Assembly (NCBI RefSeq): GCF_006345805.1 | Contig: NC_043006.1 | Span: forward strand, 92,938,001-93,002,000 | DNA length: 64,000 nucleotides | Reading direction: 5' to 3' | Source: Octopus sinensis | Lineage: Eukaryota | In this document: positions 13,290 through 55,136 of the stretch, piece after piece | How positions within the stretch are numbered: position 1 is the first letter of the stretch | How the letters are laid out: each line of letters opens with the position of its first letter | Translations under genes and position numbers: made by a program | Notes under the pieces: model-generated | Database searches by the model: none | Seen by the model: only the letters and a program-made list of their open reading frames with translations | Told to the model about the DNA's origin: nothing

Positions 13290-13325
<36 letters not shown>

Positions 13326-13329
<4 letters not shown>

Positions 13330-13570: not shown

Positions 13571-13625
<55 letters not shown>

Positions 13626-13873: not shown

Positions 13874-13924
<51 letters not shown>

Positions 13925-14644
13925 TATATATATTTATATGTATATATTCATTCTCTCATAAGACTGGCATTTACAAAAAGTGCTCTGATCTTATTTTTTG
14001 TTGCTATCTATTTGGGATTCTGAGGTAGAATGAATCCAAAAGTAAATGGGAATTGTAACGAACTCAACTTCAAAACAAGGCAACACAATTCTACACAGTA
14101 GCGTTAATCGAATGGTGCTTTAAAATTTGGGGAAAATAAAAAAGAGTGAAAATGTATTAAAAACGAAAATATCGAATGAAACATAGATAGTGGCAAACAC
14201 AATTAGAGATAATCTTTGGAAGTGCAGTCAGTTTGAAAATTTTGAAGAATTTTGAATGACTGCAACCACGTCTTAGAACCTTAAATCCATCCAAAGTAAA
14301 GGCTGGCAGTTTTGATCCTGTAACCTACTCATACAATTTCATGTATTTTTGAACGTTGGCACAATAAGAACAGAAACAATTATACGCATTCTACTCGCTC
14401 TTATATTGATCTCATAGATTCTTGCTTGACGTATTTCTAAAAGTGGTCTTCTCTTTTAGATCTTAATTTGAAATTCGCACTGACAAGGTTTTTGCAGAAT
14501 GAAAGAAGTATGTAATATATGTATAAAAACGCACACGCGCACACATATATATATTATTTGAGGTTTGTGTATACACATGGAAGTATGCTAATTGAAGCAC
14601 GTTCACAGAGGTCAAGTGATTTCATCAACAGTGTCGATTTAATT

Positions 14645-14910
14645 TATGTTTTTATTGCCGACAGGGAACTAAACATAGAGGGGACAAGCATGGACAGACA
14701 AAGGGATTAAGTCGATTAAATCGATCCCAGTGCATAACTGGTACTTATTTCATCGACCCCGAAAGGATGAAAGGCCAAGTCGACCTCGGCAGAATTTGAA
14801 CTCAGAGCGTAAATGCAGACGAAATACCTATTTCTATTTCTTTACTACTCACAAGGGGCTAAACACAGAGAGAACAAACAAGGACAGACAAACGAATTAA
14901 GTCAATTATC
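14645..14910 (-). mobile_element. Two tandem partial copies of the Meta-core-like SINE with a Tx1-like tail
   Basis: Contains the reverse complement of the GCCTTTCATCCTTTCGGGGTCGATGAAATAAGTACCAG core and two tails of the TTGTCCCCTCT.TGTTTAGCCCC type. Confidence 0.75.
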
Positions 14911-17615: not shown

Positions 17616-17649
17616 ATTACCGGAGGTAATGACACTAAACATTGTGTCT

Positions 17650-23215: not shown

Positions 23216-23753
23216 TCACAAGATTAGACAAATAATTTTATTAAAGATGAACGGTACGTTAGAAAAGACAGAGCTATTCTGAGGGCGAGACAGACAGACA
23301 GAAACTGGCCAAGTGCGATCAGACAGGATCCAATTATATCAGGCATAAGTATATTCGTATGTTATATTTGGTGTCTGATTCTATAACACTTAAAATAAAG
23401 TCATGGAATATTTGCTAATCTCAGACGACGAGGAAGAGAAAAATGCTTGCGCCCCTACCATAAACAATTAACTGAAGCATTCCTTTAAAATCTCTCACAA
23501 TGTATAGTCCTGTAATAATGAATGGCACTGCAGGTGGACAGCTGATATCTCCTCTTAAAAGTACATTTAATGATCTTCCCAATTATCATCTATAAATATC
23601 GTTATAAACTATTTTCGTCTACATGGCTAATATTTGGGTTACACGTAATTAATACGATACATAAATCTCCTAATACGCTATACTGGCCGATACTTCATAA
23701 TTTCAGACTTTGCAGATGTTACTGGTAAGTCTATAGATATATAGAGATGTAAA

Positions 23754-23989
23754 GGCGGCGAGCTGGCAGAAACATTAGCACGCCGGGCGAAATGCGTAGC
23801 CGTATTTTGCCTGCCGTTACGTTCTGAGTTCAAATTCCGCCGAGGTCGAATTTGCCTTTCATCCTTTCGGGGTTGATAAATTAAGTACCAATTACGCACT
23901 GGTGTCGATGTAATCGACTTAATCCGTTTGTCTGTCCTTGTTTGTCCCCGCTGTGTTTAGCCCCTTGTGGGTAGTAAAGAGATAGGTAT
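23754..23989 (+). mobile_element. Near-complete tRNA-derived SINE with Meta-domain-like core and Tx1-like tail
   Basis: Head GGCGGCGAGCTGGCAGAAAC, B box GAGTTCAAATTCC, core GCCTTTCATCCTTTCGGGGTTGATAAATTAAGTACC (recalled as similar to the MetaSINE/Sauria core), tail TTTGTCCCCGCTGTGTTTAGCCCCTTGTGGGTAGTAAAGA. Confidence 0.8.
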
Positions 23990-27969: not shown

Positions 27970-28170
27970 AGTGAGCTAGCAGAATCGTTAGCAGGATGGG
28001 AGCAATGCTTAGTGGTATTTCGTCTGCCGCTACGTTGAGTTCAAATTCCAACGAGTTCGACTTCGCTTTCATTCTTTCGGGATTGATAAATTAAGTACCA
28101 GAGAAACACTGGGGTCGATGCAATCGACTAGTCTCCCCCCACCAAAATTCAGACCCTGTGCCTTTAGCAG
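27970..28170 (+). mobile_element. Meta-core-like SINE with an alternative tail
   Basis: Same head and core as 23754 but ends CCCCCCACCAAAATTCAGACCCTGTGCCTTTAGCAGAAAGAATAATT. Confidence 0.7.
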
Positions 28171-28574
28171 AAAGAATAATTTATACTTTTAGTGAATGTG
28201 ACACTTAGCTGAGAAAGTTTTTAACTGTACAACTATTAGAGAATTTTTTTTTAAAAACCGCGCGGTCACCAATGTATTGTGAAGGTGGGTGTGATTGAAT
28301 ATTTGGGTAGTTAATAAAAGTGCACCTTTGATAGTATTTACAGCTGAGCGCACTAGAGCAAGGTGAAGAACACGACATGCTGCACAGTCCGGAAATCGAA
28401 CTGCCTGCTAGCTATTGTGAGTGCAAGACCCTATATATATTTATAAGTACAGATATTCTATAATTATTAGTATAATTATAATCAGGGGTTAGCTAATTGC
28501 TTCGCCACGCACCGAATTTAGAAATAGCAGTTAAAACACCTTTTCCGCTACCATAAATATCTCCCAGACAGTAA

Positions 28575-28705
28575 CGCATGTTGCTTTTCATCATTCGGGG
28601 TTCGATTAAATAAGTACTAGTTACTCACTGGAATCGAAATAATCGATTTAATCCCTTTCTCTGTCCTTGTTTGTCCCCTCTATGTTTAGCCCCTGTAGGT
28701 AAGAA
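28575..28705 (+). mobile_element. Partial Meta-core-like SINE with Tx1-like tail
   Basis: GCTTTTCATCATTCGGGGTTCGATTAAATAAGTACTAG...TTTGTCCCCTCTATGTTTAGCCCCTGTAGGTAAGAAAG. Confidence 0.65.
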
Positions 28706-29274
28706 AGCAATGTATTTATAAGGAGGTGCAGTTTTCGATCAGGGAGTTAATTATATTTCAATAGCAATAAAAGAGTAAAATTAATTAATTAATCAATTAA
28801 TTAAGAATTTTACCAAGTAGTTCGGTACGTTAAAATAATCTTTTTAGGTAATATTATACAAATATTCTATAATTATAAGCATAATTATAATCAGAGGTCA
28901 GCTAATTGCATCGCCGAATTTAGAAATAGTAGTTAAAATACCTTTTTCCGCTACCAACTACAGTTTCTGCGGGATTACTTGTAACTCACGTGGCTATTTG
29001 AGGATAAATAGGTGTTCTCATTCGGCTGTATATATCTCGAAGTGTTGGTTAAATATCAGTTATGCGATGACGCTTGATCGCGTACATATTTAATTGTAAC
29101 ACTCAAATTTATATTTGAAATTCTGCATTGAAAATTGGAAATAAGTATATATAACATTACTTTATTCCTGAAACGCGTATGTAGCTAATGTGAGTCGTGC
29201 GGATTCGATATTTTTTCTCTTTGCCTACGTAAAAAAAGTGTGTGTTACTGTCTGGGAGATATTTATGGGGAAGG

Positions 29275-36883: not shown

Positions 36884-37875
36884 TAAATAAATGACAAACA
36901 GCTACTCATTTTAAACAACTAAAGTTGCAAGCTGTAAAAGAGATGTATGCAGTAACTCTCCTGAACAGTAATGGTTGTTACCACCTTAACGTAGTTTTTC
37001 TGCATAGAACACTGTTACTAGACATTTTAGTAGAATTACTATTTACATTACTTGTACAGATTTCAGAACTACCAACTTCGCCTATTTAAGAAATAAGTTT
37101 TTAAATAATATAAGTAAAACCCAGCAATAACAGCTGTTACCGCGGCACATAAACAATGGATGTGGTTCGTAGTTAAAGCCTGTTCGTTCTGTCTTCTTGA
37201 CCTGAAAAATTTTGTAAGCTCTGTACACACTACAGGAGTTCCACATATATGTCCAGTAAAAGGAGTAATCCAGCTTATGATGGCATATGGTAGCTGATAC
37301 CCGTATAGGAGCTTTGAAATGCATGTTATGAGATTAGTATCCTGAAGATATTGAATAAATATACATGTGAAAAAAGACACACACACACACACGCATACAT
37401 ACAGACAGACAGATAGACAGATGGACAGATAGACAGACAGACAGACAGATAGACAGATATAGCTAGATAGTCAAATAGATAGATAAATATGTTTCTTTAT
37501 TAGCCACACAGGGCTGCACACAGATAGAACAAATTACAAGGTAGAGCTTTTCTTTTGAAGGTTTAAAAAAAAAAAAAAAATTAAAATAAAATAAAATAAA
37601 AAAAGGGGGGTCGATCAAAAGGGATCGTAAAAGGAGAGAAAGAGGACAAAAAAAAGGGGGGGTTAAAAAAAAGGGGGGGAGAGGAAAAAAAATTGATCAA
37701 TAGGGATCGTTATCACAGAAATGTCAATATGAAGTGTAAAGGGGAGGACAGGTGAGGTTACCCGTGGAAAGAAAAGCCTACGGAAAAGACCACGGTAACC
37801 TCGGTCAATGAAGTCACATGTTATATTTCTTTTTTTTTTTGCAAATAAGCAACTCTCTGTATTAATTTTTACGGT

Positions 37876-40800
37876 TCATAGAATCATAGTCAAGGTGGCT
37901 TCGTCATTCATACGTGCCATCCTTGCTACATTCACCCATCTTTTTTAAAACATTCACTAGACAAAACTTGCCTCTCTACTCTCACTTTTTTCTTCAAGTG
38001 ATACTTGAAGAAGTTGATGAGAGATTGACCAGAGAGGAAAGTGTTTGTCTCTAATCCTTTCAGACGCGTCCACCAGATACATTCTTTCGCCATAGCCACA
38101 AGTATGATAAAAATAGCTCTTCCTTCCCGTTTGAAGGAAGGAGGCGTGACGATATTAACGATAGACTCGGCTGATAAACCGACACGTCCCACACGTGACA
38201 GCAGTCGTTCGACATAAGCCCACAGGTGGGAAATTGCTGGACACTGCACGATTGCGTGCAGAGCGGTTTCGTCGCTCTGCCCGCATCTCGGGCAGGTCGG
38301 CCCCGTGTTTCTCGAGCCATGCCTATAGAGCTTATCCCGAACGGGTAGCGCTTCTCGGTAGCACCGCCAGGCCAGGGATCTCTGGAAGTTGTCCATAGGT
38401 CCCGGGCCGAAAGTCGTTTGAAACAGGCGGGTCAGGTATCCTCGTCGACGCCCAGGTTTGCCCCGAGCTCGTCGTCGTACCTCCCCTCCACTAATCCCCT
38501 ATAGAATGCTTGGTTGTGTTGAAGTCACTCAAGGTCGACCCGGGACGGCAGAGTTGCTTGAGAGCAACGCGACACTCGCGGTGCCATTCGCCCTTCTTCG
38601 GCCTCTTTTTGATCCACGACTGTAGTTCGGTCATGGAGACGAGTTGCGGGAATGCGTGCCTCACAAACGGCGACCACACCTGTTCACCGTCGTCTACATA
38701 GAGCCGGAGATGTCGCAGTCTCAGCGCGTGTCTGCGCATCATCAACCACGGCATGCCCAGCCCTCCTTTTAACGGGTGTTGACAGCAAATGGATCGCCTG
38801 ACCATCGGGACGCATCCTTTCCACAAGAAGCGGAAGAGGATGCGTTCTAGTTTGGTGATGGTAGGGTCGGGACAAGGTACGACGGTCAGGCGGTAGTAGA
38901 TGATGGACGCGATGTACGCGTTCACCACCTCCGCCCGACCTTTTAGGGACAGTTTCCTCTCGGCCCATTGCTGGGCGAGAGTGACCACCCTACTCGTTAT
39001 CTCGTTCCAGTTCTTCTCCATTTGGAGGTCCGGACCGAACCAGACCCCGAGCAACTCAAACGGGCCGTCTGTCCAGCGTCCCACGACACGACGGAGGTAC
39101 TGGTGGACGGCATGGGCTTGCTTCTCCAGGTGCCGAGCCGCAAGCCCACTGACTTTTCCCGGTTGATTTTTGCTCCTGTCACCGCTTCGTAGTCTTTCAG
39201 TGTCTCGCCGACCCGCTCGATGTGCTCGTGGCTTGACACTATGACGGTGACGTCGTCCGCGTATGCAGACACGCTCGTCCCGCATCCTAATTCTCGCGGG
39301 ATGCCCCTCAGAGTCGCCAGCTTCCGCAGTAGTGGCTCAAGAGTCAATACGTATAGAAGCGCCGAGAGGGGGCATCCCTGACGGACCGAACGTGCAATGT
39401 CGAAGGGTCTCGATAGATGTCCATTTACGCGAATTACCGAACGGATGCCTCTGTACAAGGCAGCTATCCAGCCGCGGAAGACGGGACCGAAACCAGCCGC
39501 TCTCAGGACTGCCTCCAAGTATCGATGGTCTACCCTATCAAAGGCTTTCGATTGATCCAAGTTGATCAGGGCCCCACCCATGCCAGGTTCGTTAACTACC
39601 CTGTCTATGATGTAGCGCATCAGATGGAGGTTGTCATGGATGCTCCGGCCCGGCACGGCGCACGTTTGTGCGTTGTCGACCAGTTTCTCCATGACAAGCG
39701 CCAACCTCTTGGCTAACACCTTTGTCAAAATTTTCAGGTCTGCATTGAGCAGAGTGATTGGCCTAAAGTTATCTATAATGTTTCCCTTGTTTGGATCTTT
39801 CTTCAGCAGAGTTACAGCTCCTCGACTCACAAAACCGGGTATGCTCCCGTTTTGCTGCCAGTTGCAGTATACCGCTGCCAAGACGTCTCCAAACAAGTCT
39901 GGCATACAATAGTAAAATTCGTAGGGTAGACCATCCAAACCCGGTGATTTGTCCCTCGAGCATTCTGCCATCGCTTCCCGCACTTCCGCCGCCGTGATGG
40001 CACCTTCGCAGCACCTGCCTTTCTTGTCGAGAGTCGTGGCAGGCTATGTAGGTAGGCACTGAAGTCTACCCTACGTTCTTGCCCTCCACTCGTCCCGAAC
40101 AGTCGGGCAAAATGCTGCTGAAAGGCCTCACACATTTTACTTGGCTCGAGCAATTCGCGCCCTGTTCATCTACCAGTGACCGAATGGTGGCTTTGTTGCC
40201 CTGTTGCGCCTCTGCCACCCGGGCCTCTCTCGCGGCTCCAACACCTTCGTTCCTTAGAGCACGCATCCTAGCTCTGACAGCACATCCTTCGTGTTTGGCG
40301 TTGAAGTGTTGGTCGAGGGCCAACCTCGCCGCCAAAACGTCGGATGCGATGCCGCTTCTAATTGCCTCTTCTAGCTTCTTAACTAGCTCACCCTCTACTC
40401 TATTTCTATCTATGGCTAGTGCTTTGCTGTACCTAATCGCTTCTGCTTTTACTCTCTCTTGGCAAACCACCATTTGTTGTTGATGATGGCTCCCGTCAAA
40501 GCCCTCTTTACTAGTGTGCTAATCCGGTCTCTGAAAACTTGTCTGGACGGGAATGATGCGTTCAGTTTCCAGTACCCAGGACCCTGTCTATGTGCCTTAT
40601 CTAAGTCTAGCGTACACGTCACCAATTTGTGATCCGTGTAGCTGACTGTGTGGATTGTGGACATCCTAAGTTATCCTTGTCTACTGTCCTACACAGTATC
40701 CTATCTAGATACGATCTCGACGACCCACTGCGGTTGCTCCATGTCCACGTTGGTGCATTTGGGTGGTCGAGTCGGTACCTGTCAGACAGTTGGAATCGTC

Positions 40801-41305
40801 TGAGCAGGTCTCTGAGGCATTTGCATCCCCTTCTGTTTCTGTCTGTCTCTACCCACGTAGTCTACATGCGTGTCAAGGTAGCATTCCAATCCCCCACTAA
40901 GAGTAAAGGACGAGACGTTCCCAAGAATACTTCTAGACGTCGAAAGAAATCCGCCCGACCTGTTAAGGGCGGTGCGTAGACTGATACGAGTCGAAAAGCG
41001 CACCCATTGCTGCCGTCAACATCCAGAACGATCAGTCTACCCTCCGGGTCTACGAATATCGTCTTGACTTCGAGATCCAGGCTCTTGTGAAAAAGTACCG
41101 CGGTGCCACTACCGCCCATCCTCGGCAGACAGGGAGCGAAATAAATGTTAAACTGTCCGCCAAACATGGACTTTAGGGCCCGTGGCTCGTGGAGTCTGGT
41201 CTCACTTATGGCTATGATTCCCAAATCATGTGACTTGATCTAGAGGTATCCTTGTTTCCAAGGAGACCCCAAGCCACGCGCATTCACACAACCAATCTTG
41301 ACCAT
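37876..41305 (-). pseudogene. Copy A ORF2 (APE endonuclease, RT, C-terminal zinc motif), frameshifted
   Basis: MVKIGCVNARGL, AISETRL, LVSVYAP, VGDWNA, SYLDR, YWKLNAS, SPGLDGLPYEFY, FRPITLLNAD, LDQSKAFDRVDH, RQGCPLS, AYADDV, CPRCGQSDETALHAIVQC. Confidence 0.9.
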
Positions 41306-41355
41306 GATTCTATTGGGGTGTGTGCTTTAAAACACACAAATGAAAGTACAGAGAG

Positions 41356-43477
41356 TTACTTACTTGTGTCGAAAGTTTTGGCTTCCTCGTTCTTTGATGT
41401 GTCTTCGAGGAGGTTTCTATATAGTTTTTGGGACAGATATTTCTGGAAACCCCCTACAGCATTTGGAAGAGGGCTTTGAGTTTGTGGTGTTGTGTTTGTG
41501 TGATGTGTAGTATTTTGATGTGTTTGGGTGGGTGTTGTAGTCGTGATGATTGCTATTTTTAAAGTCATCTTCACAAATGTTTGTGTATCCTGTGATGTAC
41601 TCCATTAGTTTGGAGTCTTTTGTGTCTATCGCTGATAGCATTGTTTTTGTGGTGTTGGTGCTTGTTTTGTTGTGTATGGAGTTTTCAGGGTTCAGGTATC
41701 TCCCTGCTTTGGTTGCGATTTCTTGTTTGGTTTTTCTTGATCTTTTTCTTTTACCCCCTGTGGCTATTTGCCATTCTGTCGAACTTTCATCGTTAGATGA
41801 AAAGTCTGACGAATCAGCAGGGGGCAAGGGTAAAGCGTCTGGGTGGGTGTGTTTGTGCGGTTGTAGATATTGTTGTGGTGCGCGGGGAGGGTGTTGCTGG
41901 GGGGTGTTGTGGTTATTGTCTCTCCTACATCCTTGGTGCTTGTCTTCTTCGTTGTTATTCTTGGTGTTGGAATTGGTTTATTTGTTGTTGGTGGTGATGA
42001 TTCTGTTCTTGGCGCTGGTGTTGGTGTTGTTTGGTTGGGTTGGCTTGTTCTTTGTTGTTTTTCCTGCATTTCCGCATACAGCTTCTTGACTAGCTGTCCA
42101 TATTGTGGTGTGGGCAATAATCCTGGCTTTTGTGATTTTTCCTGTGGCTGTTGTTGTTGTTGTAATTTTGCGGCAGATTGCACTCCTTTTTGAGGTGTGC
42201 CTCACTGCCACATGTATAGCATCGTGGCCTTCTGCCCTCGACTACTACGTATAACTTGCGGCCATCCTCAAGATGTACGTGGGTGGGGATTTTATTTATG
42301 TCCTCTTGACTTATGTGGAAGAGGAACTCTATTCTCTTTCCCAGCCAGTCCTTGTTTTCCGAAACACCGATATCTAGGATGTTTAAGTCCTCCATTTCGG
42401 ATGTTAAGGCGGATGTAATCCACAGTGTTGTAGTCACTTGGGGGACACCACTGATAATGACTTTCGTCACCTTCTGGCCGAGGTAACTCGGTGTCAACGT
42501 TAGTTCATCAGAATGAAGGGTTATCGTTGAGAATTTCTTCGCCAACTCTTCATTCTGAAAAACCACCTGTACGTGTGCGAACTTGTTCGCCCAAGTCACA
42601 CAATCCTTGTATCCCCAGATGGGGCGTAAGCACTTTTCGACTTTGTCTGTGCTTGCCTTTTCTGGACTTTTTTTTTTTATTTGTGATTTTATATACAATT
42701 GTCTTTTTTTTCTCCTCATTCAGTATGTGCTGAGGTATGTGTAAGAGTATTTTTCCGTTTTGATTTGTAATAAGGTTTCTGCAATCTTTAATCTGTTGTG
42801 TAGTAAACGAAACTTTTGTTACCTTTTCTTTTATCGCCTCGGCGAAGTTTGTTGTTGTTTTGTTATTGTTGTTACTGCGTGGTGTTGGTGTTGATGGCAG
42901 GGGGTGGGTTGTAGGTTTGTGGTTGCTGATTATGCAACTAGCAAGGGGTGGAAAATTGCCTGCGTAATTTAGTCCTGCATTAGCGCAAATTCGGCATTTC
43001 GTTTGCTTGTCGTCGTTATTTTTTCACTTGTTGGTGATGGAGTGAGCAGTGTTGAAGGGAATGTGTTGTCGTCGTGTGTTGTTGTTGTTGTGTTGTTGTT
43101 GTTGTTGTTGTTGTGTTGTTATTGTCGTTCTTGGTGACGGCGGTGGTGTTAGTAGTATTAGTAGCATTGACGGCACGGTCTTTGGTGGCGGTGATGGTGA
43201 TGTTGGTATTGTTATTGGTGGGACGTCTTTAGTAGTAGGATAGCAGTTTTAGTAGCAGATTCTGCCATGGTGTTGTTGTCGGTGTTGGTGGTGGTGGTGG
43301 ACTCACTGATGGTGTTGACGGTGCTTGGCCTTGCGACCTTTGTTTTGTATTTGTTGCTGTTGTCGATGTTGATGGTGGCGGAGTTGTCAGGTTCAGCGTA
43401 AGGTAACAGAGCATCCTGTTTTTCTGCCTCTGCGTCACGTTGACTTGCACCTCAGCCTCGTGGTGACCAGTGGCCAT
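41356..43477 (-). pseudogene. Copy A ORF1 (gag-like), frameshifted
   Basis: Starts MATGHHEAE (ATG at 43477); Thr-rich N-terminus, RRM-like core (ORF 42090-42719), CYTCGSEAHLKKEC CCHC knuckle, Thr/Gln-rich tail; split over several frames. Confidence 0.8.
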
Positions 43478-43703
43478 TTGGGAAATAAAATGGCTAAATG
43501 AAACCACGAAGGCTATGAGAATTTTCTTTTAAATTTTGCCCACAAGGGGCAAAATTTTGTGTAGATATTAATCAAGGTTTGCAGTGGATGTTGTTGCACA
43601 ACTTTAAACACAAAATATTTCACAATAAACAATTTTCAACGTACAAAATGACCAACTTACGTGGAGCCCATTTGACTAGCGTCCGTCCATGTCGAGAGAG
43701 GAT

Positions 43704-43821
<118 letters not shown>

Positions 43822-43893
43822 ATATGTTCTTATTAGCCACACAGGGCTGCACACAGATAGAACAAATTACAAGGTAGAGTTTTCTTTTGAAGG

Positions 43894-43927
<34 letters not shown>

Positions 43928-45863
43928 AGGGGGAGGTTCGATCAAAAGGGATCGTAAAAGGAGAGAAAGAGACAAAAATAAGGGGGGTTAAAAAAAAAAA
44001 AAAGGGGGGGGGGAGAGGAAAAAAAATGATCAATAGGGATCGTTATCACAGAAATGTCCATATGAAGTGTAAGGGGGAGGACAGGTGAGGTTTACCCGTG
44101 GAAAGAAAAGCCTGCGGAAGAACACGGTAACCTCGGTCAATGAAGTCACATTTTATATTTTTTTTTTTTTTTTTTTTTTTTGCAAATAAGCAACTCTCTG
44201 TTTTCGATTTCTGGGTTCATAGGACTATGCTCAAGGTGGCTTCGTCATTCATACGTGCCATTCTTGCTACATTCACCCATCTTTTTTTTAAAACATTCGC
44301 TAGACAAAACTTGCCTCTCTACTCTCACTTTCCTTTTCAAGTGGTACTTGAAGAAGTTGATGAGAGATTGACCAGAGAGGAAAGTGTTTGTCTCCAATCC
44401 TTTCAGACGCGTCCACCAGATACATTCTTTCGCCATAGCCACAAGGATGATGAAAATAGCTCTTCCTTCCCGTTTGAAGGAAGGAGGCGTGACAATATTG
44501 ACGATAGACTCAGCTGATAAACCGACTCGTCCCACACGTGACAGCAGTTGTTCGACATAAGCCCCAGGTCGGAAATTGTTGGACACTGAACGAGTGCGTG
44601 CAGAACGGTTTCGTCGCTCTGACCGCATCTCGGGCAGGTCGGCCCCGTGTTTCTCGAGCCGTGTCTGTAGAGCTTATCCCGAACGGGTAGCGCTTCTCGG
44701 TAGCACTGCCAGGCCAGGGATCTCTGGAAGTTGTCCATGGGCCCTGGCCCGAAAGTCGTCCCGAACAGGCGGGTCAGGTACTCCTCGTCGACGTCCAGGT
44801 TCGCCCCGAGCTCGTCGTCGTACCTCCCCTCCACTAAACCCCTATAGAATGCTTTGGTTGTGTGTGAAGTCACTTAAGGTCGACCCAGGACGGCAGAGAG
44901 TTGCTTGAGAGCAACGCGACACTCGCGGTGCCATTCGCCCTTCCTCGGCCTCTTTTTGATCCACGACTGCAGTTCGGTCATGGAGACGAGCTGCGGGAAA
45001 GCGTGCCTCACAAACGGCGACCACACCTGTTCACCGTCGTCTACATAGAGCCAGAGATGTCGCAGTCTCAGCGCGTGTCTGCGCATCATCAACCACGGCA
45101 TGCCCGCCCTCCTTTTAACGGGTGTTGACAGCAAATGGATCGCCTGACCATCGGGACGCATCTTTCCACAAGAAGCGAAAGAGGATGGCGTTTGTAGTTT
45201 GGTGATGGTAGGGTCGGGACAAGGTACGACGGTCAGGCGGTAGTAGATGACGGACGCGATGTAGTGTTCGCCACCTCCGCTCGACCTTTTAGGGACAGTT
45301 TCCTCTCGGCCCATTGCCGGGCGAGAGTGACCACCCTACTCGTTATCTCGTTCCAGTTCTTCTCCACTTGGAGGTCCGGACCAAAACCAGACCCCGAGCA
45401 ACTCAACCGGGCCGTCGGTCCAGCGTCCACGACGGAGGCGCTGGTGACGGCATGGGCTTGCTTCTCCAGGTGCCTAGTCGCAAGCCCACTGACTTTTCCC
45501 GGTTGATTTCGCTCCTGTCACCGCTTCGTAGTTTTTCAGTGTCTCGCCGACCAGCTCGATGTGCTATGCTAGACACTATGACGGTGACGTCGTCCGCGTA
45601 TGCAGACACGCTCGTCCCGCATCCCAATCTCTCGCGGGATGCCCCTTAGAGTCGCAGCTTCCGCAGTAGTGGCTCAAGAGTCAATACGTATAGAAGAGCG
45701 CCGAGAGGGGGCATCCTGACGGACCGAACGTGCAATGTCGAAAGGTCTCGATAGATGTCCAGTTACGCGAATTACCGAACGGATGCATCTGTACAAGGAG
45801 CTATCCAGCCGCGGAAGACGGACGAAACCAGCCGCTCTCAGACTGCCTCCAAGTATCGATGGT
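43822..45863 (-). mobile_element. Tx1-like LINE copy B, 5'-truncated within RT, subfamily 1
   Basis: 3'UTR and ORF2 C-terminal half very similar to copy A, with many 1-2 bp indels; stops at CCAAGTATCGATGG|T-TAGATAG. Confidence 0.9.
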
Positions 45864-46298: not shown

Positions 46299-46598
46299 AA
46301 CTTTCTTTTATTAGCCACACAGGGCTGAATACAGAGGGGACAAATACAAATGCAGAGCTTTTCATTTTCGAGGGTGGAAAAAAATAAAAAATGTAAGATT
46401 GCGATCAAAAGGGATCGAGAGGAGGAAAAAAACGAAAAAAAAGGAAATCGTGTATCACAGAAATAATGATGTAAACATGATATAACAAGATGGGTTCATC
46501 CGTGGGAAGAAAAGCCTACAGAAAAGACCACGGGAACCCCAGTCAGGGAGGAAATAACCACATGAGATCGAAAATGCTCTTTTCTTTCTTTTTTACGA

Positions 46599-49500
46599 TT
46601 ACAGGATCATGCTCAAAATGGTTTCGTTCTAGCACGCACCATCTTTGCAACATTCACCCATCTTTTTTTGAATCTTTCGCGAGACAAAACTTCCCTCTCC
46701 ATTCTCACCTTCCTTTTCAAGTGGTACTTGAAAAAGTTGATGAGCGATTGGCCAGAGAGAGGTAAGTGTTTGTCTCTAATCCTTTCGCTCGAGTCCACCA
46801 CACACATTCTTTCACCATGGCCACCAGTACGATGAAAACTGCCTTGCCTTCCCGGTTGAGGGAAGGGGGCGGAGCAATTCTCACGATAGACTCGGCCGAT
46901 AGGCGGATTCGTCCCACACGTGACAGCAGCCGTTCGGCATAAGCCCACAGGTCGGAAATGGTTGGACATTGCACGAGTGCGTGCAGAACGGTTTCGTCGC
47001 TCTGACCGCATCTCGGGCAAGTCGGTCCAGTGTGTCTGGAACCGTGTCTGTAGAGCTTATCCCGAACAGGTAATGCTTCTCGATAGCACTGCCAGGCCAG
47101 GGATCTTTGGTGATTGTTCATAGGTCCCGGCCCGAAAGTTGTCCTGAACAGGCGGGTCAGGTGTTCCTCGTCGACGCCCAGACTCTGCCCGAGTTCGTCG
47201 TCGCACCTCCCCTCCACTAATCCTCTATAGAATGCCTTTGTTGTGATGGAGTCGCACAAGTTCGATCCCGGACGGCAGAGTTGCTTGAGAGCAACGCGAC
47301 ACTCGCGGTGCCATTCGCCTAGCCTCGGTCTCTGCTTGATCCATGACTGTAGTTCGTCCAAGGAGACGAGCTGCGGGAAAGCGCGCCGCACAAAAGGCGA
47401 CCACCCCTGTTCACCGTTGTCTATGAAGCGCCGGAGATGTCGCAGTCTCAGCGCATGTCTGCGCATCATCAACCACGGCATGCCCAGCCCTCCATTTAGC
47501 GGGTGTTGGCAGCAAATGGATCGCCTAACCATCGGAACGTTTCCCTTCCACAAGAAGCGGAAGAGTATGCGTTCCAGTTTGGTGATGGTAGGGTCGGGAC
47601 AAGGCACGACGGTCAGACGATACTCGATGACGGATGCGATGTACGCGTTCGCCACCTCCGCCCGACCTTTTAGGGATAGCTTTCTCTCAGTCCATTTCTG
47701 GGTGAGAGTAGCCACCCTAGTCGTTATCTCGCCCCAGTTCTTCTCCATTTGGAGGTCCGGACCGAACCAGACCCCGAGCAATTTAACCGGTCCGTCCGTC
47801 CAGCGTCCCACGATGGAGACGCTGTTGGACGGCATGGGCTTGCTTCTCCAGGTGCCGAGCCGCAAGCCCACTGACTTTTCCCGGTTAATTTTTGCTCCCG
47901 TTACCGCTTCGTATTCTTTCAGTGTCTCGCCGACCAGCTCGATGTGCTCGTAGCTCGACACTATGACGGTGACGTCATCCGCGTATGCAGACACGCTCCT
48001 CCCGCATCCCAGCTCTCGTGGGATGCCCCTCAGCGTCGCCAGTTTCCGCAGTAGTGGCTCAAGAGTCAGTACATACAGCAGCGATGAGAGGGGGCATCCC
48101 TGACGAACCGAACGCATGATGTTAAAAGGTCTGGATAGATGACCATTTACGCGAACTACTGAGCGGATGCCGCTGTATAAGGCAGCGATCCAACCGCGGA
48201 AAACTGGACCGAAACCAGCCGCTTTGAGGACAGCCTCCAAGTAGTGATGGTCTACCCTATCGAAGGCTTTTGATTGATCCAAATTGATCAGCGCCCCACC
48301 CATGCCAGGATTTTTAACTACCCTGTCTATGATGTAGCGCATCAGATGGAGGTTGTCATGAATACTTCTACCCGGCACGGCGCATGTTTGCGCCTTGTCG
48401 ATTAGTTTCTTGATGACAAGCGCCAACCTCTCGGCTAACACTTGGCCAAAATTTTCAAATATGCGTTGAGCAGAGTGATGGGCCTGAAATTATCTATGAC
48501 GTCCCCCTTGTTTGGGTCTTTCTTGATCAGTGCCACTGCTCCTCGCTTTACAAAGCAGGAATACTCCCGTTCTCTGCTGCCAGTTGCAGTAGACAGCTGC
48601 CAAGACGCCTCCAAACAAGTCTGGCATATGAAAATAAAATTCGTAGGGCAGACCATCCAAGCCTGGTGACTTGTCTCTCGCGCAGCCTACCATCGCATCC
48701 TGTACGTCCGCAGCTGTGATAGGCTTTTCACAAGACTCCACCTCCCTTGCTGAGAGTCGTGGCAAGGCATGCAGGTAGGCACTAAAGTCCACTCTGCTTT
48801 CTGACTCACCACTTGTCCCAAACAGTTGGGTGAAGTGTTGTTGAAAAACCCCACACATCCTTTTAGGCTCGAGCAATTCGCGCCCCTGTTCATCTATAAG
48901 AGACTTGATGGTGGCTCTGTTGCCTCGTTGCGTCTCCACCACTCGGGCCTCTTGGGCGGCTCCAACTCCTTCGTTCCTCAGAGCACGCATCCTAGCTCTG
49001 ACAACGCATCCCTCGTGTTTGGCGTTGAGGTGTTGGTCGAGGGCCAATCTCGCCGCCAGTACGTTGGACGCGATGCCAGTTCTAAGTGCCTCTTCTAAAA
49101 CCTTAACTAATTCTCCCTCTATTCTATTTCGGTCTAATGCTAAGGCTCTACTGTATCTGACTGATTCTGCTTTAATCGCTTTTTTTAGGGCATACCACCA
49201 TCTGTTGTTGATGATGGTACCCGTCAAAGCTCTCTTAACTAATGTGCTGATCCGGTCCCTGTAAACCTGTCGTGCTGTGTAAAAGACGCGTTCAGTTTCC
49301 AGTAACCAGGACCCTGCCTATGTGTCTTATCTAAGTCAAGTGTACAAGTCACAAACTTGTGATCTGTGTAACTGACTATATGAAATTGTGGACAACCTAC
49401 ACTATTTTATCTATTGTCCTACAGAATACTCTGTCTAAGTATGATCTGGACGACCCGATGCGGTTACTCCATGTCCACATTGGCACATTCGGGTGGTCCA

Positions 49501-50035
49501 GTCGGTACCTGTCAGACAGTTGGAAACGTCTGAGCAGGTCTTTGAGGCATTTGCATCCCCTTCTATTGCTATCTCTGCCACGTAGTCTAGATGCGTGTCC
49601 AGGGTGGCATTCCAATCCCCCACTAAAAGTAAAGGACGAGACGTTCCCATGAAAGACTCTAGACGTCGAAAGAAATCTGGTCGGCCTGTTAAGGACGGAG
49701 CATAAACTGCTATCAGTCGAAAAGCACACTCATTGCTGCCATCGACATCCAAAACGACCAGCCTACCCTCCGGGTCTAGGAATTTGCTCTTACTTTGAGA
49801 TCCAGACTCTTCGGATAAGCACCGCGGTGCCACCTCCGCCCATTCTCGGTAGACACGGAGAAAAATAAATGTTGAAATGTGTACCGAAAATGTGCTGGAG
49901 TGCCCGCAAGCTGTGGAGTCTGGTCTCACTGATGGCTATGATATTCAGATTTAGTGACTTGATGTCATTTAACAGGTAGCCTTGTTTCCAAGGCGACCCC
50001 AAGCCACGTACATTTATACTACCTATTCTGAGCAT
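46599..50035 (-). pseudogene. Copy C ORF2 (APE-RT-zinc), few frameshifts
   Basis: MLRIGSINVRGL at 50035; the uninterrupted 574-aa ORF 46717-48441 contains QTCAVPGRSI, LDQSKAFDRVDH, RQGCPLS, AYADDV and CPRCGQSDETVLHALVQC. Confidence 0.9.
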
Positions 50036-50077
50036 GTTCCGATAAAAGTGCAAAAAAGGAAAAGGAGAGAGAAAAGG

Positions 50078-52225: not shown

Positions 52226-52442
52226 TTTGGAAATAAAATGGCTAAATGAAACCACGAAGCTATGAGAATTTTTTCTTTTAAATTTTGCCCACAAGGGGCA
52301 AAATTTTGTTGTCGATATTTATCAAAGTTTACAGTGGATGTTGTTGCACAACTTTTAAGCACAAAATGTTTGTCAATATACACTTTTAAATGGTCAAAAT
52401 AAATGATTACCTTCGGAGCTGAAACGACATCACATCCGTCAG

Positions 52443-53504
<1,062 letters not shown>

Positions 53505-53609: not shown

Positions 53610-54904
53610 GTTCTAAAATATTAAACTGACTTGGCTGGTCATTTAAAGCTATGTCCATTACTTTCATTCTAATTTACCACTTAGTAATAAACCACCCGAG
53701 AAGACGAAACACATATTTGCTTACTTTACTTTTTTGCAATATTTGTTTAAATTTTAAAACAATATCTTATCTCATTTCCAAAATATGATCCTATAGTGTA
53801 ATAAAAGCAAAAATATGTGCCTTTGGTGTCTAGAAAACATCTTAGATTTGCAATGTTTTGATAAGATTTTCAAATTTCAACATACTTTTGGGAACATAGG
53901 TAGATTTGCATCTATTATTTCTTATGATTTGTATATTTCTAACCACTGCCCTTCCAAAAACTGCATTGCAAATTAATATCAGGTAGGATGCTGAGAAATG
54001 AGATTAGCTGCGAGTAGTTAAACTGTAGGAAAAAATAAAATAAGCTTTCTAAGTAATGGTTGGATTAAAAAGAGAGAGTAAGAGAGAATCAAAGATTATG
54101 GAACACAGAAAGCTGGACAGATAGATATATTTGTAAATATGATGAATATGAGATTCATAGGAAGATGTTGAAAAAAGCCCGAAACCGTGGAAAATAAAAG
54201 GAAATGTATAAAGACGGAGAACTGAAATGAGACGCATTAACCGGCAAATATATAATTCAGAAGTAAAATCAAACCGGTACAATAATGAGTTAGAGAATAA
54301 GTAAAAACGAATATTAGCAAAACTGTGCAAGGAAGTCCGATGGGTAGGGAAAGTATTTTACATGTAACAATGAGTGCAAATTTTTGAAAAAAATTCAGGA
54401 TTCAATCTCGAATCAAAGGATCTTCATAAATAAGATTAAAAGAAGACTACATACACCCTCCGGTTACGAGAGAAAAGAGGGGGAGATATATTGCATGAAT
54501 ACTTCTTAGTATTTTGGAAGGAGTCGAGACCAATATGAGATTAAAAGTAAACGTACGCAAATAGTAACATGTGCTTAAGAGGATCAATTCTTACCGACGT
54601 GGCACAGAATTTAATACAATTACACACACACTTCAACTTCTTAATTTATAAAGTGAAGGGTTGGATCTCGCGCTGGTGACCAAAGTCCACCTATCCGCTA
54701 ATGTATTCCAGAACGAATAATGTGTCCCAGAATGAACCAAAACTTTGTCATCGGAATATAACCAACGTAAACATTAGTAGGTGCATACACAGCGATATAT
54801 ATACGCACGCACACACTCGCACACATGTACAGATGCAAGGTGTGCATATAACTATGTATGTATCTATCAATCTTTCTGTCTGCTTATCTCTCTATTTATC
54901 CGAT

Positions 54905-55016
54905 ACATGATCCCTATTAATCGGCTTTTTTTCTCACGATCCCTTTTGATCGAAATTCGACCCGCATTTTTTGTTCTCTTCTTCCCAAAAAGTAAAGCTT
55001 TACTTTGTATTTTGTC
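54905..55016 (+). mobile_element. Old 3'UTR relic (F) of the Tx1-like family
   Basis: GATCCCTATTAATCG, CGATCCCTTTTGATCG and AAAGCTTTACTTTGTATTTTGTCTATC parallel the family 3'UTR; preceded by decayed CTAT-like repeats. Confidence 0.6.
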
Positions 55017-55055
55017 TATCTACCTACCTACCTACCTACCTACCTACCTACCTAT

Positions 55056-55133: not shown

Positions 55134-55136
<3 letters not shown>

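What the first reader, a model, noticed from the sequence alone, without database searches (positions are those of the whole stretch)
14836..14883. SINE 3' tail matches the Tx1-like LINE 3' terminus: candidate Tx1-SINE partnership
Seen: the SINE tail (reverse complement of 14836-14883) CCTTG---TTTGTTCTCTCTGTGTTTAGCCCCTTGTGAGTAGTAAAGAAAT aligns with the copy A terminus CCTTGTAATTTGTTCTATCTGTGTGCAGCCCTGTGTGGCTAATAAAGAAAC at 39 of 48 aligned positions (hand alignment, one 3-nt gap). The SINE copies at ~23935-23980, ~28665-28700 and ~14650-14690 carry TTTGTCCCC(T/G)CT.TG, matching copy C (TTTGTCCCCTCTGTATTCAGCCCTGTGTGG). Established: many SINEs share 3' ends with the LINE that mobilises them (CR1, L2, RTE). 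Inference: an abundant Meta-core SINE is or was mobilised by this Tx1 lineage, an uncommon partner, and the SINE copies here are not in CTAT repeats.
Basis: partly seen in the sequence, partly recalled or inferred. Interest (0 to 1): 0.82.

Follow-up and report, generated by a model that had tools for sequence, protein, structure and literature searches.

The report
Octopod SINE shares LINE 3' tail
A short mobile element (SINE) in this octopus-like genome ends in the same ~50-base hairpin-containing tail as a long L1/Tx1-type mobile element (LINE) nearby, so this LINE lineage very likely copied the SINE around the genome; it is a sound new example of a known kind of partnership.

Summary
Both quoted strings are in the window verbatim, and the hand alignment (39 of 48) reproduces exactly. 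The SINE tail's best match anywhere in the 6.2-kb LINE, on either strand, is the LINE's 3' terminus (z 8.6; 0 of 300 dinucleotide shuffles reach it).

Related loci strengthen the homology. The terminal motif is conserved in LINE relatives from Argonauta hians and two other contigs, while the rest of the 3'UTR diverges. In Argonauta, two SINE families with different heads carry a tail 91-97% identical to the Argonauta LINE tail (z about 15). There, 9 of 13 tails abut CTAT (P about 2e-19). Three target-site duplications start with (C)TAT, the unit of the (CTAT)n arrays that hold all six LINE copies in the window.

The tail folds into a small conserved hairpin with limited covariation.

- The window's four SINE tails are older and only about 75% identical to the resident LINE tails. 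They match the Argonauta LINE no worse and lack CTAT junctions, so these LINE copies are not their direct source.
- Tx1 clade membership is consistent with the evidence but untested.
- A Tx1-SINE precedent exists (SINEU and Tx1-Mar).

Verdict: a new member of a known kind, of moderate interest.

The parts
14836..14885 (-). The SINE tail named in the finding. It is the last ~50 nt of a diverged, 5'-degraded SINE copy (about 14836-14960) and ends ...GTGAGTAGTAAAGAAAT(AGAAATAG).
   Evidence: profile E 2.2e-14.
14640..14835 (-). A second, 5'-truncated SINE copy inserted head-to-tail directly after the first one. Its own degraded tail lies at 14647-14694.
   Evidence: (E 1.6e-4).
23753..23983 (+). 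The most complete SINE copy: head with A/B-box-like motifs, core ...CCTTTCATCCTTTCGGGGTTGATAAATTAAGTACCA..., and LINE-like tail at 23934-23983.
   Evidence: (E 1.7e-14).
28583..28711 (+). A 5'-truncated SINE copy with the LINE-like tail at 28663-28711.
   Evidence: E 1e-8.
37491..43704 (-). LINE copy A, full length (~6.2 kb). It has ORF1 with a CCHC knuckle (42090-42719), an endonuclease domain (40862-41224), a reverse transcriptase (38997-39983), a C-terminal zinc-binding region, and a ~440-nt 3'UTR. ORF2 is split by frameshifts. Terminal tail at 37491-37541.
43830..45863 (-). LINE copy B, 5'-truncated (~2 kb), 92% identical to A. Tail at 43830-43874.
46302..52444 (-). LINE copy C, a diverged subfamily (77-84% identical to A), ~6.1 kb with broken frames. 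Its longest ORF is 46717-48441 (RVT_1 plus zf-RVT). Tail at 46302-46350 (TTTGTCCCCTCTGTATTCAGCCCTGTGTGGCTAATAAAAGAAA).
52695..53372 (-). LINE copy D, 5'-truncated (0.68 kb), 95% identical to A. Tail at 52695-52745.
54900..55022 (+). LINE fragment F: the last ~120 nt of the 3'UTR, running into (CTAC)n/(CTAT)n. The terminal hairpin is missing.
55136..56535 (+). LINE copy E, 5'-truncated (1.4 kb), 96% identical to A. Tail at 56485-56535.
43705..43829 (-). One of seven (CTAT)n arrays, read in the sense of the adjacent LINE, that flank every LINE copy. The others are 37375-37490, 45864-46301, 52443-52694, 53373-53607, 55015-55135 and 56536-56657. They give two layouts: unique DNA-(CTAT)n-D-(CTAT)n-C-(CTAT)n-B-(CTAT)n-A-(CTAT/CTGT)n-unique DNA on the minus strand, and F-(CTAT)n-E-(CTAT)n on the plus strand.
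27970..28179 (+). A SINE copy with the same head and core but an unrelated tail (...CCCCCACCAAAATTCAGACCCTGTGCCTTTAGCAGAAAGAATAA). Copies at about 29244-29448(-), 33716-33845(-) and 17464-17640(-) also lack the LINE-like tail. This SINE group therefore uses at least two tail types.

Best explanation
The last ~50 nt of the SINE are homologous to the 3' terminus of an octopod LINE lineage of the L1/Tx1 type (apurinic-type endonuclease, reverse transcriptase, C-terminal zinc-binding domain). In Argonauta the shared stretch is ~65 nt. The module is a small interrupted hairpin followed by AAUAAAGAAAU: an inner 4-bp stem RGCC / loop CUUGU / GGCY, extended by UGU/AUA and UCU/AGA.

Most likely mechanism:
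- The module belongs to the LINE and is the handle by which its ORF2 protein picks its own RNA ('stringent' 3'-end recognition).
- SINE RNAs that acquired the module are reverse-transcribed and integrated in trans by target-primed reverse transcription.
- Priming happens where the nicked bottom strand ends in ...ATAG and can pair with a CUAU at the RNA 3' end. Insertions therefore abut CTAT. In a (CTAT)n microsatellite, or just behind an earlier insertion, they pile up head-to-tail.

In the window's species the resident LINE copies (A-F) are a younger sublineage nested in (CTAT)n. The four SINE copies are older products of an earlier or sister member of the same lineage.

Shown: tail homology and its terminal position; conservation of the tail across LINE lineages; near-identity of SINE and LINE tails in Argonauta; CTAT at the Argonauta junctions and inside target-site duplications; (CTAT)n nesting of the LINE.

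Inferred: recognition of the hairpin by the protein; the priming model; the direction LINE to SINE; the Tx1 clade.
For: 1. Significance and position (window). The SINE tail against the whole LINE gives z 8.6 (copy A) and 7.9 (copy C), with 0 shuffles reaching the score, and the best hit is at the 3' terminus of both. Across all 20 SINE-by-LINE pairings the best local match is at the termini in 19.

2. The tail is a conserved LINE feature.
- LINE relatives carry the same terminus: Argonauta hians (L121, 66% amino-acid identity in ORF2), JGI contig L126 and ENA contig L125. They end ...CGGCCCTTGTGGCTAATAAAGAAAT...GGGCCCTTGTGGCCAATAAAAGAAAT(C)(ATT)n and ...CTCTTGTGGCCAATCAAC..., while most of the 3'UTR has diverged.
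- Window LINE A against the Argonauta LINE is 30/32 identical in the terminal stretch.

3. Independent replicate in Argonauta.
- At least 7 copies of the orthologous SINE and at least 5 copies of a second SINE with a different head carry the tail.
- SINE1 against the Argonauta LINE is 30-32 of 33 identical.
- Local alignment z is 14.6-15.6 for SINE1 and 9.6 for SINE2, again terminal.
- SINE2's GGCC...GGCC variant matches the L126-type LINE variant.

4. Shared target.
- 9 of 13 Argonauta tails are followed by CTAT, against a background of 0.004 per position (P about 2e-19).
- Three target-site duplications begin at that (C)TAT: CTATTTCAAGGAA, CTATAGRYCAGCAC and (C/T)TATTATCTTT(C/G)TGCC.
- All six LINE copies in the window sit in sense-oriented (CTAT)n.
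- Head-to-tail stacking is seen for LINEs (window), for SINEs in Argonauta (15015 then 15273; 1993, 1735, 1521) and for the window SINE pair 14836/14640.

5. Structure.
- The minimum-energy fold equals the homologous three-tier hairpin for all four window LINE tails folded (A, C, D, E), the Argonauta LINE and most Argonauta SINE1 copies.
- RNAalifold recovers the inner stem on its own. Pair 1 is G-U x5, G-C x4, A-U x2. Pair 2 is G-C x11 and C-G x1.
- In the hand-made structural alignment the inner stem is paired in 20-21 of 22 sequences.

6. LINE type.
- Pfam finds Exo_endo_phos, RVT_1 and zf-RVT.
- The best solved-structure match is human LINE-1 ORF2p at 3e-50, against 4e-24 for R2.
- L1-Tx1 is the only L1-like group listed among recently active Octopus vulgaris LINEs (PMC13282606).
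- ORF1 proteins with CCHC/RRM are described as typical of Tx1 (PMC5203782).
Against: 1. The window's SINE tails are only 25-26 of 34 identical to the resident LINE tail, no closer than to the Argonauta LINE at 26-27 of 32. SINE 23753 against copy A alone is not significant (z 1.2-1.5).

2. None of the four window SINE tails abuts CTAT or lies in a CTAT array. Three are followed by GTAT within 0-8 nt, which is not significant in this AT-rich DNA.

3. The window SINE copies fold the hairpin poorly. They are 80-90% alike, against 92-96% for A-type LINEs, so any activity is past.

4. No LINE copy in the window has an intact ORF2.

5. Covariation rests on few independent events, and copies within a family are not independent.

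6. The Argonauta evidence comes from a single 22-kb locus with two LINE 3' ends.

7. No other LINE family was available for comparison, in the window or elsewhere. A better-matching partner cannot be excluded.

8. Trans-mobilisation has not been tested experimentally.
Confidence: 0.7

Rival explanations
1. The direction is reversed. An ancestor of the LINE lineage captured a 5'-truncated SINE copy at its 3' end, for example through a SINE insertion at the CTAT just behind the LINE followed by read-through. The tail is then SINE-born and merely retained by the LINE.
For: - Insertions do stack directly behind earlier insertions, so a SINE landing at a LINE's 3' end is mechanically plausible.
- The shared segment is short (50-65 nt), as expected from a strongly 5'-truncated SINE.
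Against: - The tail is present and terminal in every LINE lineage sampled, down to 66% amino-acid identity. It is one of the few conserved blocks of the 3'UTR.
- At least two SINE families with unrelated heads carry it, and their tail variants follow different LINE variants.
- No further SINE body sequence lies upstream of the tail in any LINE.
- Even if this reading were true, the tail would since have served both elements, so the partnership inference would stand.
Confidence: 0.1
2. The tails are homologous, but the SINE is mobilised by a different LINE not seen here. That could be a separate family or clade carrying a closer version of the tail (GCCCCTTGTGGGTAGTAAAG...). The resident CTAT-nested LINE would then be only a cousin, or share the tail by exchange.
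For: - Window SINE tails are about 75% identical to the resident LINE tails and equally close to the Argonauta LINE.
- They retain the CTTGT loop that copies A and C have lost.
- They lack CTAT junctions.
- No other LINE family could be examined.
Against: - In Argonauta the LINE of this same lineage matches the SINE tail at 91-97% and shares the junction motif. A partner inside the lineage therefore exists in at least one octopod.
- The simplest version of this rival, a sister subfamily of the same lineage, is already part of the best explanation. Only a partner from another clade is a true alternative.
Confidence: 0.15
3. The resemblance is a chance match between two T/G-rich, low-complexity 3' ends and has no biological meaning.
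For: - The tails are short and pyrimidine/G-rich.
- One pairing (SINE 23753 against copy A) is within the shuffle range.
Against: - In three of the four tail-against-LINE comparisons (z 5.6-8.6) and in the full SINE against copy C (z 7.9), none of 300 dinucleotide-preserving shuffles reaches the observed score, and the match lies at the terminus of both elements; the exceptions are SINE 23753 and its tail against copy A.
- The same relation recurs independently in Argonauta with z about 15.
- A tail profile hits nothing else in 64 kb above E = 0.001.
Confidence: 0.02

Closest known systems
Stringent-type LINE/SINE pairs with a common 3' tail, such as eel UnaL2/UnaSINE1 (Kajikawa and Okada 2002) and the ~58 pairs surveyed by Ohshima (PMC3472496, PMC3747384)
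   Same: The SINE shares only the terminal ~50-65 nt with the LINE. The shared part holds a conserved stem-loop followed by a short conserved stretch and short 3' repeats. Several SINE families recruit the same tail.
   Different: The LINE here is of the L1/Tx1 type rather than L2, CR1, RTE or I. It is nested in a microsatellite. The hairpin is very small (4-bp core), and its role in recognition is inferred, not shown.
SINEU mobilised by Tx1-Mar in crocodilians (Kojima 2015, PMC4494074)
   Same: A Tx1-type, target-specific LINE is inferred to mobilise SINEs. A shared target preference is part of the evidence: the Mariner-N4_AMi transposon there, CTAT here in Argonauta.
   Different: SINEU heads derive from snRNA, and that case rests on target preference rather than a shared tail. 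Here the heads look tRNA-like with a Meta-type core, and the main evidence is tail homology. The window's own SINE copies do not share the LINE's target.
Stringent L1-clade pairs in plants and algae: maize/sorghum LINE1-1_ZM lineage with its SINEs, and Chlamydomonas L1-1_CR with SINEX-3_CR (PMC3472496)
   Same: An L1-superfamily LINE with a conserved, structured 3' end that SINEs share. This argues that stringent recognition is not confined to the CR1, L2 and RTE clades.
   Different: Those elements end in poly(A) and are not site-specific. This one is an animal lineage, ends in or abuts CTAT units, and nests in (CTAT)n.
Microsatellite-specific Tx1-clade LINEs: Kibi (TC)n, Koshi (TTC)n, and crocodilian Tx1 in (TTCC)n/(TTTC)n (Kojima and Fujiwara 2004; PMC4494074)
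   Same: An endonuclease-plus-reverse-transcriptase LINE whose copies all sit, in sense orientation and head-to-tail, inside one kind of microsatellite.
   Different: The repeat unit is CTAT. The papers read here name no SINE partner for Kibi or Koshi. Relatives of the present LINE end in other repeats ((ATT)n in L126) or a single CTAT (Argonauta), so the specificity looks labile.
MetaSINEs (Nishihara 2016, PMC4824008) and bivalve conserved-domain SINEs with Nimb, CR1-Zenon, L2 or CR1 partners (PMC11481361)
   Same: A head, a conserved central domain and exchangeable 3' tails. The window holds at least two tail types on one head and core.
   Different: No L1/Tx1 partner is reported for MetaSINEs in those papers. 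Whether the octopod core is the Meta-domain was not checked against the published consensus.

Membership tests
LINE-SINE partnership through a shared 3' tail (stringent type) | The SINE 3' end is significantly similar to the LINE 3' end. | tested here: met
   Window: z 8.6 and 7.9, with 0 of 300 shuffles reaching the score. Argonauta: z 14.6-15.6.
LINE-SINE partnership through a shared 3' tail (stringent type) | The similarity is confined to the terminal region and lies at the 3' terminus of both elements. | tested here: met
   The best local alignments end within a few nt of both termini, and there is no similarity upstream.
LINE-SINE partnership through a shared 3' tail (stringent type) | The tail holds a conserved stem-loop maintained by compensatory change. 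| tested here: inconclusive
   RNAalifold recovers a 4-bp stem: pair 1 G-U/G-C/A-U, pair 2 G-C x11 and C-G x1. The inner stem is paired in 20-21 of 22 sequences. Independent events are few, energies are small, and the window SINE copies fold poorly.
LINE-SINE partnership through a shared 3' tail (stringent type) | SINE and LINE share the same 3'-junction or target-site signature. | tested here: inconclusive
   Met in Argonauta: CTAT after 9 of 13 tails (P about 2e-19), with target-site duplications starting at (C)TAT. Not met for the four SINE copies of the window, none of which abuts CTAT.
LINE-SINE partnership through a shared 3' tail (stringent type) | SINE and LINE were active in overlapping periods. 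| tested here: inconclusive
   Window SINE copies are 80-90% alike, A-type LINE copies 92-96%, and A against C 77-84%. The sample is far too small for age landscapes.
LINE-SINE partnership through a shared 3' tail (stringent type) | Experimental trans-mobilisation that depends on the tail. | not testable with these tools
   Needs a retrotransposition assay.
Tx1 clade of the L1 superfamily of non-LTR retrotransposons | ORF2 carries an apurinic-type endonuclease, a reverse transcriptase and a C-terminal Cys/His zinc-binding motif. | tested here: met
   Pfam Exo_endo_phos 6e-9, RVT_1 1e-32, zf-RVT 6e-8. Full-length relatives show the same three domains. The sequence CPRCGQSDETVLHALVQC is visible in ORF 46717-48441.
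Tx1 clade of the L1 superfamily of non-LTR retrotransposons | The reverse-transcriptase domain falls inside the Tx1 clade in a phylogeny (RTclass1 or Repbase references). | not testable with these tools
Indirect support only: the best solved structure is human L1 ORF2p at 3e-50 against R2 at 4e-24, and L1-Tx1 is the only L1-like group listed among recently active O. vulgaris LINEs.
Tx1 clade of the L1 superfamily of non-LTR retrotransposons | Target-specific insertion, typical of many but not all Tx1 members. | tested here: met
   Six of six copies in the window are embedded in sense-oriented (CTAT)n and stacked head-to-tail. The Argonauta copies are not in arrays but abut CTAT or an AT-rich site.
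Tx1 clade of the L1 superfamily of non-LTR retrotransposons | ORF1 of the RRM/CCHC (type I-like) kind. | tested here: inconclusive
   The zf-CCHC hit has E 0.004 and 17.6 bits, below Pfam's 20.8 cut-off. A canonical C-X2-C-X4-H-X4-C is visible (RCYTCGSEAHLKKEC). No RRM hit.
MetaSINE superfamily | A central ~66-bp Meta-domain. | tested here: inconclusive
   A 19-mer of the core occurs in more than 120 metagenome contigs, inside SINEs that share ~30 nt of core and continue into a GGCGCCATCTGGTGAA (Deu-like) segment. That layout resembles published Meta+Deu SINEs (PMC4824008). No published Meta consensus was available to align.
MetaSINE superfamily | A tRNA-derived head with Pol III A and B boxes. 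| tested here: inconclusive
   ARAGORN finds no tRNA in the window or in L121. Rfam gives no hit on the SINE even at E = 10. By eye there are a B-box-like GAGTTCAAATTCC and an A-box-like TGGCAGAA.
MetaSINE superfamily | Variable 3' tails on a common head and core. | tested here: met
   At least two unrelated tail types sit on the same head and core within the window.

The most novel reading that the evidence does not exclude
A CTAT-targeting, L1/Tx1-type LINE lineage that recognises its RNA through a 3' hairpin was a main engine of the very large SINE expansion in octopods. On this reading the SINEs escaped the LINE's microsatellite confinement. Needing only a single (C)TAT or less to prime, they spread genome-wide while the LINE stayed parked in harmless (CTAT)n arrays. 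That would be an animal example of stringent recognition in the L1 superfamily in which driver and passenger differ in target range.
Probability: 0.25. Interest if true: 0.65.

Novelty: new member of a known kind. Interest (0 to 1): 0.5.

Why it matters
SINEs are among the largest components of octopus genomes: about 11.6% of the O. vulgaris genome (PMC13282606) and about 40% of repeat content (PMC8967140). None of the papers I could search names the LINE that moved them. MetaSINE partners were stated to be unknown in 2016 (PMC4824008).

A credible partner, with a defined tail module and a target motif, would make the octopod SINE expansion testable through age landscapes, insertion logos and reporter assays. 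It would also add an animal case to the few L1-superfamily LINEs that seem to need a specific 3' end; in the papers read here those cases are plants and algae.

The gain is incremental. The principle of a shared tail is decades old, and a Tx1-SINE link has been reported before.

Tried and rejected
1. Metagenome scan with the SINE core 19-mer.

2. Scans of viral and prokaryotic genome collections for SINE and tail motifs. Nothing turned up beyond one chance hit in a bacterial MAG.

3. Contigs encoding more distant ORF2 relatives (P0009, P0122, P0124, giving L123, L128, L129). They come from other organisms (GC 42-53%); L123 has no octopod SINE or tail, and L128 and L129 were only read at their 3' ends, which do not end in the octopod tail. 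L122 and L124 stop before the LINE 3' end. P0005 was not on record.

4. A second protein search seeded with the Argonauta ORF, to collect more Argonauta copies. None was found.

5. Cluster look-up for source names that could settle the clade. No names were given.

6. ARAGORN and Rfam on the SINE heads. No tRNA call.

7. Pfam on the other long ORFs of the window, to find rival LINE families. None, so the test for a better tail in a non-Tx1 LINE could not be run inside the window.

8. Literature searches, including literal sequence strings. No paper in the library describes this SINE, this LINE or the pair. Supplements that might list SINE/LINE pairs are not held.

9. Target-site duplications of the window's SINE copies. 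Candidates exist (ATGTAA, or GTA(TA)AAGG, for copy 23753), but they are ambiguous with four copies, so the exact 3' end and target of the window SINE stay unresolved.

10. Homology between the SINE palindrome GTCGAT-GTA-ATCGAC and the LINE 3'UTR palindromes (CGATCCCTTTTGATCG; CCCCTATTGGGG in relatives). Rejected: they have different sequences and positions, and the LINE palindrome is conserved across LINE relatives on its own.
Full report
**What is at the coordinates.** On the minus strand, 14836-14885 is the 3' end of a diverged SINE copy. A second, 5'-truncated SINE copy follows it directly (14640-14835). The 'copy A terminus' is exactly the minus-strand sequence at 37491-37541. An automatic local alignment reproduces the hand alignment: 39 matches over 48 aligned positions with one 3-nt gap. 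Three other SINE copies carry the same tail, at 23934-23983 (+), 28663-28711 (+) and 14647-14694 (-). Their TTTGTCCCC(G/T)CT variant is also found in LINE copy C at 46315-46344.

**Is it more than chance?** Yes.
- The 48-nt tail was aligned to the whole 6221-nt copy A on both strands. It scores 45, against 21.8 +/- 2.7 for 300 dinucleotide-preserving shuffles (maximum 38), giving z 8.6.
- The full SINE copy against copy C gives z 7.9.
- In both cases the top hit lies at the 3' terminus of SINE and LINE.
- One pairing is unremarkable on its own: SINE 23753 against copy A, z 1.2-1.5.
- A profile built from the tails hits only the four SINE tails and the five LINE termini in the 64-kb window above E = 0.001.

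**The LINE.** Between 37.4 and 56.7 kb lie six copies of one LINE:

| Copy | Coordinates | Strand | Description |
|---|---|---|---|
| A | 37491-43704 | - | full length, 6.2 kb |
| B | 43830-45863 | - | 5'-truncated, 92% identical to A |
| C | 46302-52444 | - | diverged subfamily, 77-84% identical to A |
| D | 52695-53372 | - | 5'-truncated, 95% identical to A |
| F | 54900-55022 | + | 3'UTR stub without the terminal hairpin |
| E | 55136-56535 | + | 5'-truncated, 96% identical to A |

Every copy is flanked on both sides by (CTAT)n, read in its own sense. The layout is unique DNA-(CTAT)n-D-(CTAT)n-C-(CTAT)n-B-(CTAT)n-A-(CTAT/CTGT)n-unique DNA, plus F-(CTAT)n-E-(CTAT)n in the other orientation. 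This element therefore nests in (CTAT)n and stacks head-to-tail.

Pfam finds an Exo_endo_phos endonuclease, RVT_1 and zf-RVT, plus a sub-threshold CCHC knuckle in ORF1. All ORF2 frames in the window are broken. A close relative's ORF2 matches human LINE-1 ORF2p best among solved structures (3e-50, against 4e-24 for R2).

The element is thus of the L1 superfamily. The Tx1 label fits the domain set, the CCHC-type ORF1 (PMC5203782) and the microsatellite nesting (PMC4494074). It also fits the fact that L1-Tx1 is the only L1-like group listed among recently active O. vulgaris LINEs (PMC13282606). I could not place the reverse transcriptase in a phylogeny, because no Tx1 references were reachable and no source names were available.

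**Relatives elsewhere.** A protein search with the 574-aa ORF of copy C found octopod relatives:
- one in Argonauta hians (66% identity, on a 14-Mb contig);
- several on short NCBI, JGI and ENA contigs (64-76%).

Their 3' ends show that the terminal motif is a conserved block of the LINE, while most of the 3'UTR has diverged:
- Argonauta...TTCTGTGTCGGCCCTTGTGGCTAATAAAGAAAT. One search confirms that this fragment is a 5'-truncated LINE 3'UTR.
- L126: ...CCGGGCCCTTGTGGCCAATAAAAGAAATC(ATT)n.
- L125: ...CTCTTGTGGCCAATCAAC...

Window copy A and the Argonauta LINE are 30/32 identical in the terminal stretch, although ORF2 is only 66% identical at the protein level.

**The replicate in Argonauta.** The 22-kb Argonauta locus holds at least seven copies of the orthologous SINE (same core and the same GTCGAT...ATCGAC palindrome). 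It also holds at least five copies of a second SINE with a different head. All end in the LINE-like tail.
- SINE1 against the Argonauta LINE is 30-32 of 33 identical over the terminal stretch.
- Local alignment of whole SINE copies against 2.5 kb of LINE gives z 14.6-15.6 (SINE1) and 9.6 (SINE2), again at the terminus, over 45-65 nt.
- SINE2 carries the GGCC...GGCC stem variant seen in the L126 LINE. SINE1 carries the GGCC...GGCT variant of the Argonauta LINE.

Several SINE families with different heads share one LINE's terminal block, and their variants track LINE variants. That is what donation from LINE to SINE predicts.

**Target.**
- In Argonauta, 9 of 13 tails (SINE and LINE) are followed at once by CTAT. 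The background frequency is 0.004 per position, so the binomial P is about 2e-19.
- Three SINE copies have clear target-site duplications, and each begins at that (C)TAT: CTATTTCAAGGAA; CTATAGRYCAGCAC, where a SINE inserted directly behind an earlier SINE; and (C/T)TATTATCTTT(C/G)TGCC.

CTAT is therefore part of the target, not only of the element. This links the dispersed Argonauta SINEs to the (CTAT)n nests of the LINE in the window.

A simple model fits. The nicked bottom strand ends in ...ATAG and pairs with a CUAU at the RNA 3' end to prime reverse transcription. One CTAT is enough. A CTAT array, or the junction left by an earlier insertion, is a preferred site. This explains the head-to-tail stacks of LINEs (window), of SINEs (Argonauta) and of the SINE pair at 14640-14960. 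The model is inferred.

**Structure.** The tails fold into an interrupted hairpin: UCU/AGA, then UGU/AUA, then an inner RGCC-CUUGU-GGCY.
- This is the minimum-energy fold for all four window LINE tails folded (A, C, D, E), for the Argonauta LINE and for most Argonauta SINE1 copies.
- RNAalifold recovers the inner stem on its own. Pair 1 is G-U x5, G-C x4, A-U x2. Pair 2 is G-C x11 with one C-G, the window SINE, where both sides changed.
- In my structural alignment the four inner pairs are formed in 20-21 of 22 sequences.

The support is real but thin. There are few independent events, the energies are small, and shuffle z-scores of single sequences are modest.

- The window's SINE tails are only 25-26 of 34 identical to the resident LINE tails. 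That is no better than their match to the Argonauta LINE, 26-27 of 32.
- They keep the CTTGT loop of the Argonauta and L126 LINEs, whereas copies A and C have CTGTGT.
- They fold the hairpin poorly, and none abuts CTAT.
- They are 80-90% identical to one another, against 92-96% among A-type LINE copies.

The four SINE copies are therefore best read as old products of an earlier or sister member of this lineage, not of copies A-F. The same head and core also occur in the window with an unrelated tail (27970-28179 and three more copies), so this SINE group has used at least two partners.

'Meta-core' is plausible. A 19-mer of the core recurs in more than 120 metagenome contigs, inside SINEs of another invertebrate that continue into a Deu-like GGCGCCATCTGGTGAA segment. 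That layout resembles published Meta+Deu SINEs (PMC4824008). I could not align to the published Meta consensus, and neither ARAGORN nor Rfam recognises the head as a tRNA.

**Rivals.**
- Chance is excluded.
- Capture of a SINE fragment by the LINE cannot be ruled out formally. It is disfavoured because the tail is conserved in all sampled LINE lineages, it is shared by SINEs with unrelated heads, and no further SINE sequence lies upstream of it in any LINE.
- A partner from another LINE clade with a closer tail remains possible for the window's species. No other LINE family could be examined.

**Known context and novelty.**
- Shared 3' tails are the classic signature of LINE-SINE partnerships (PMC3747384).
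- Within the L1 superfamily, tail-sharing pairs are described for plants and a green alga (PMC3472496).
- A Tx1-type LINE has been proposed to mobilise SINEU in crocodilians, on the basis of shared target preference (PMC4494074).
- MetaSINE partners were unknown in 2016 (PMC4824008). Later work in bivalves names Nimb, CR1-Zenon, L2 and CR1 (PMC11481361).
- I found no paper in the library describing this octopod pair, nor any of its sequences. Repbase and Dfam could not be consulted.

I rate it a new member of a known kind, of moderate interest. It offers a concrete candidate driver, tail module and target motif for the very abundant octopod SINEs. The evidence is purely comparative, and the direct evidence in this window concerns old, degraded copies.

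Noticed in passing
window 43536-43554 and 52285-52303 (minus strand; 5'UTR of LINE copies A and C): Both full-length LINE copies carry a perfect hairpin, TTTTGCCCCTTGTGGGCAAAA, about 150 nt from their 5' end. Its core GCCCCTTGTGGG is identical to the window SINE's version of the tail hairpin. That is a closer match than the LINE's own 3' hairpin gives. A 12-mer match of this kind has a rough chance expectation of about 0.03.
   Followed up: partly
window 1137-1252 (-): A full-length 5S rRNA match (Rfam RF00001, 63.7 bits, E 5e-11). It could be a gene, a pseudogene or a 5S-derived repeat.
   Followed up: no
window 13286-13917, and a related piece near 15170-15215: A 296-bp unit repeated 2.1 times at 99% identity, embedded in (TA)n. 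It contains TAGTTTCAGCTCACGAGCTGTGGCCATGCTAGGGCACCGCC, and a similar segment recurs near 15190. This is another repeat family, not characterised.
   Followed up: no
window 27970-28179 (+), 29244-29448 (-), 33716-33845 (-), 17464-17640 (-): SINE copies with the same head and core but tails unrelated to the LINE, for example ...CCCCCACCAAAATTCAGACCCTGTGCCTTTAGCAGAAAGAATAA. This implies at least one more partner LINE, which was not identified.
   Followed up: partly
window 54900-55022 (+): LINE stub F keeps ...AAAGCTTTACTTTGTATTTTGTCTATCTA and then runs straight into (CTAC)n/(CTAT)n. It lacks the terminal hairpin, perhaps through slippage or recombination between the internal TCTATCT and the array.
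   Followed up: no
L001-L120 (JGI metagenome contigs such as Ga0209149, Ga0126329, Ga0056133, Ga0049105): More than 120 contigs in metagenomes carry a SINE with the core ...CTCAGCCTTTCATCCTTTCGGGGTCGATAAATGAGTAGTAAGCTGCAAT... followed by GGCGCCATCTGGTGAA. This is host DNA of some invertebrate with a Meta+Deu-like SINE. It shows how conserved this ~30-nt core is across phyla.
   Followed up: partly
L126 (JGI Ga0486131_03187), about 2030-2105: A relative of the LINE (67-74% amino-acid identity) has the same terminal hairpin but ends in (ATT)n instead of (CTAT)n. The terminal repeat, or target microsatellite, is therefore labile within the lineage.
   Followed up: partly
L123 (about 12750-12800) and L128 (about 10000-10060): More distant ORF2 relatives (42-46% identity) from other organisms have GGGCCTTGTGACC or GGCCATGTGCCA near the end of their long 3'UTRs. 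These resemble the octopod inner hairpin. Their true 3' termini were not determined.
   Followed up: no
protein P0005: A protein deposited as 'MAG: zinc-binding domain-containing protein [Herbaspirillum sp.]' is 61-64% identical to the C-terminal part of this octopod LINE ORF2. It is almost certainly animal DNA mis-binned into a bacterial genome.
   Followed up: no
L121 1450-2100 and 15000-15320: Argonauta SINEs of two families are stacked head-to-tail. Each new copy is inserted at the CTAT left at the 3' junction of the previous one, which mirrors the LINE stacks in the window.
   Followed up: yes
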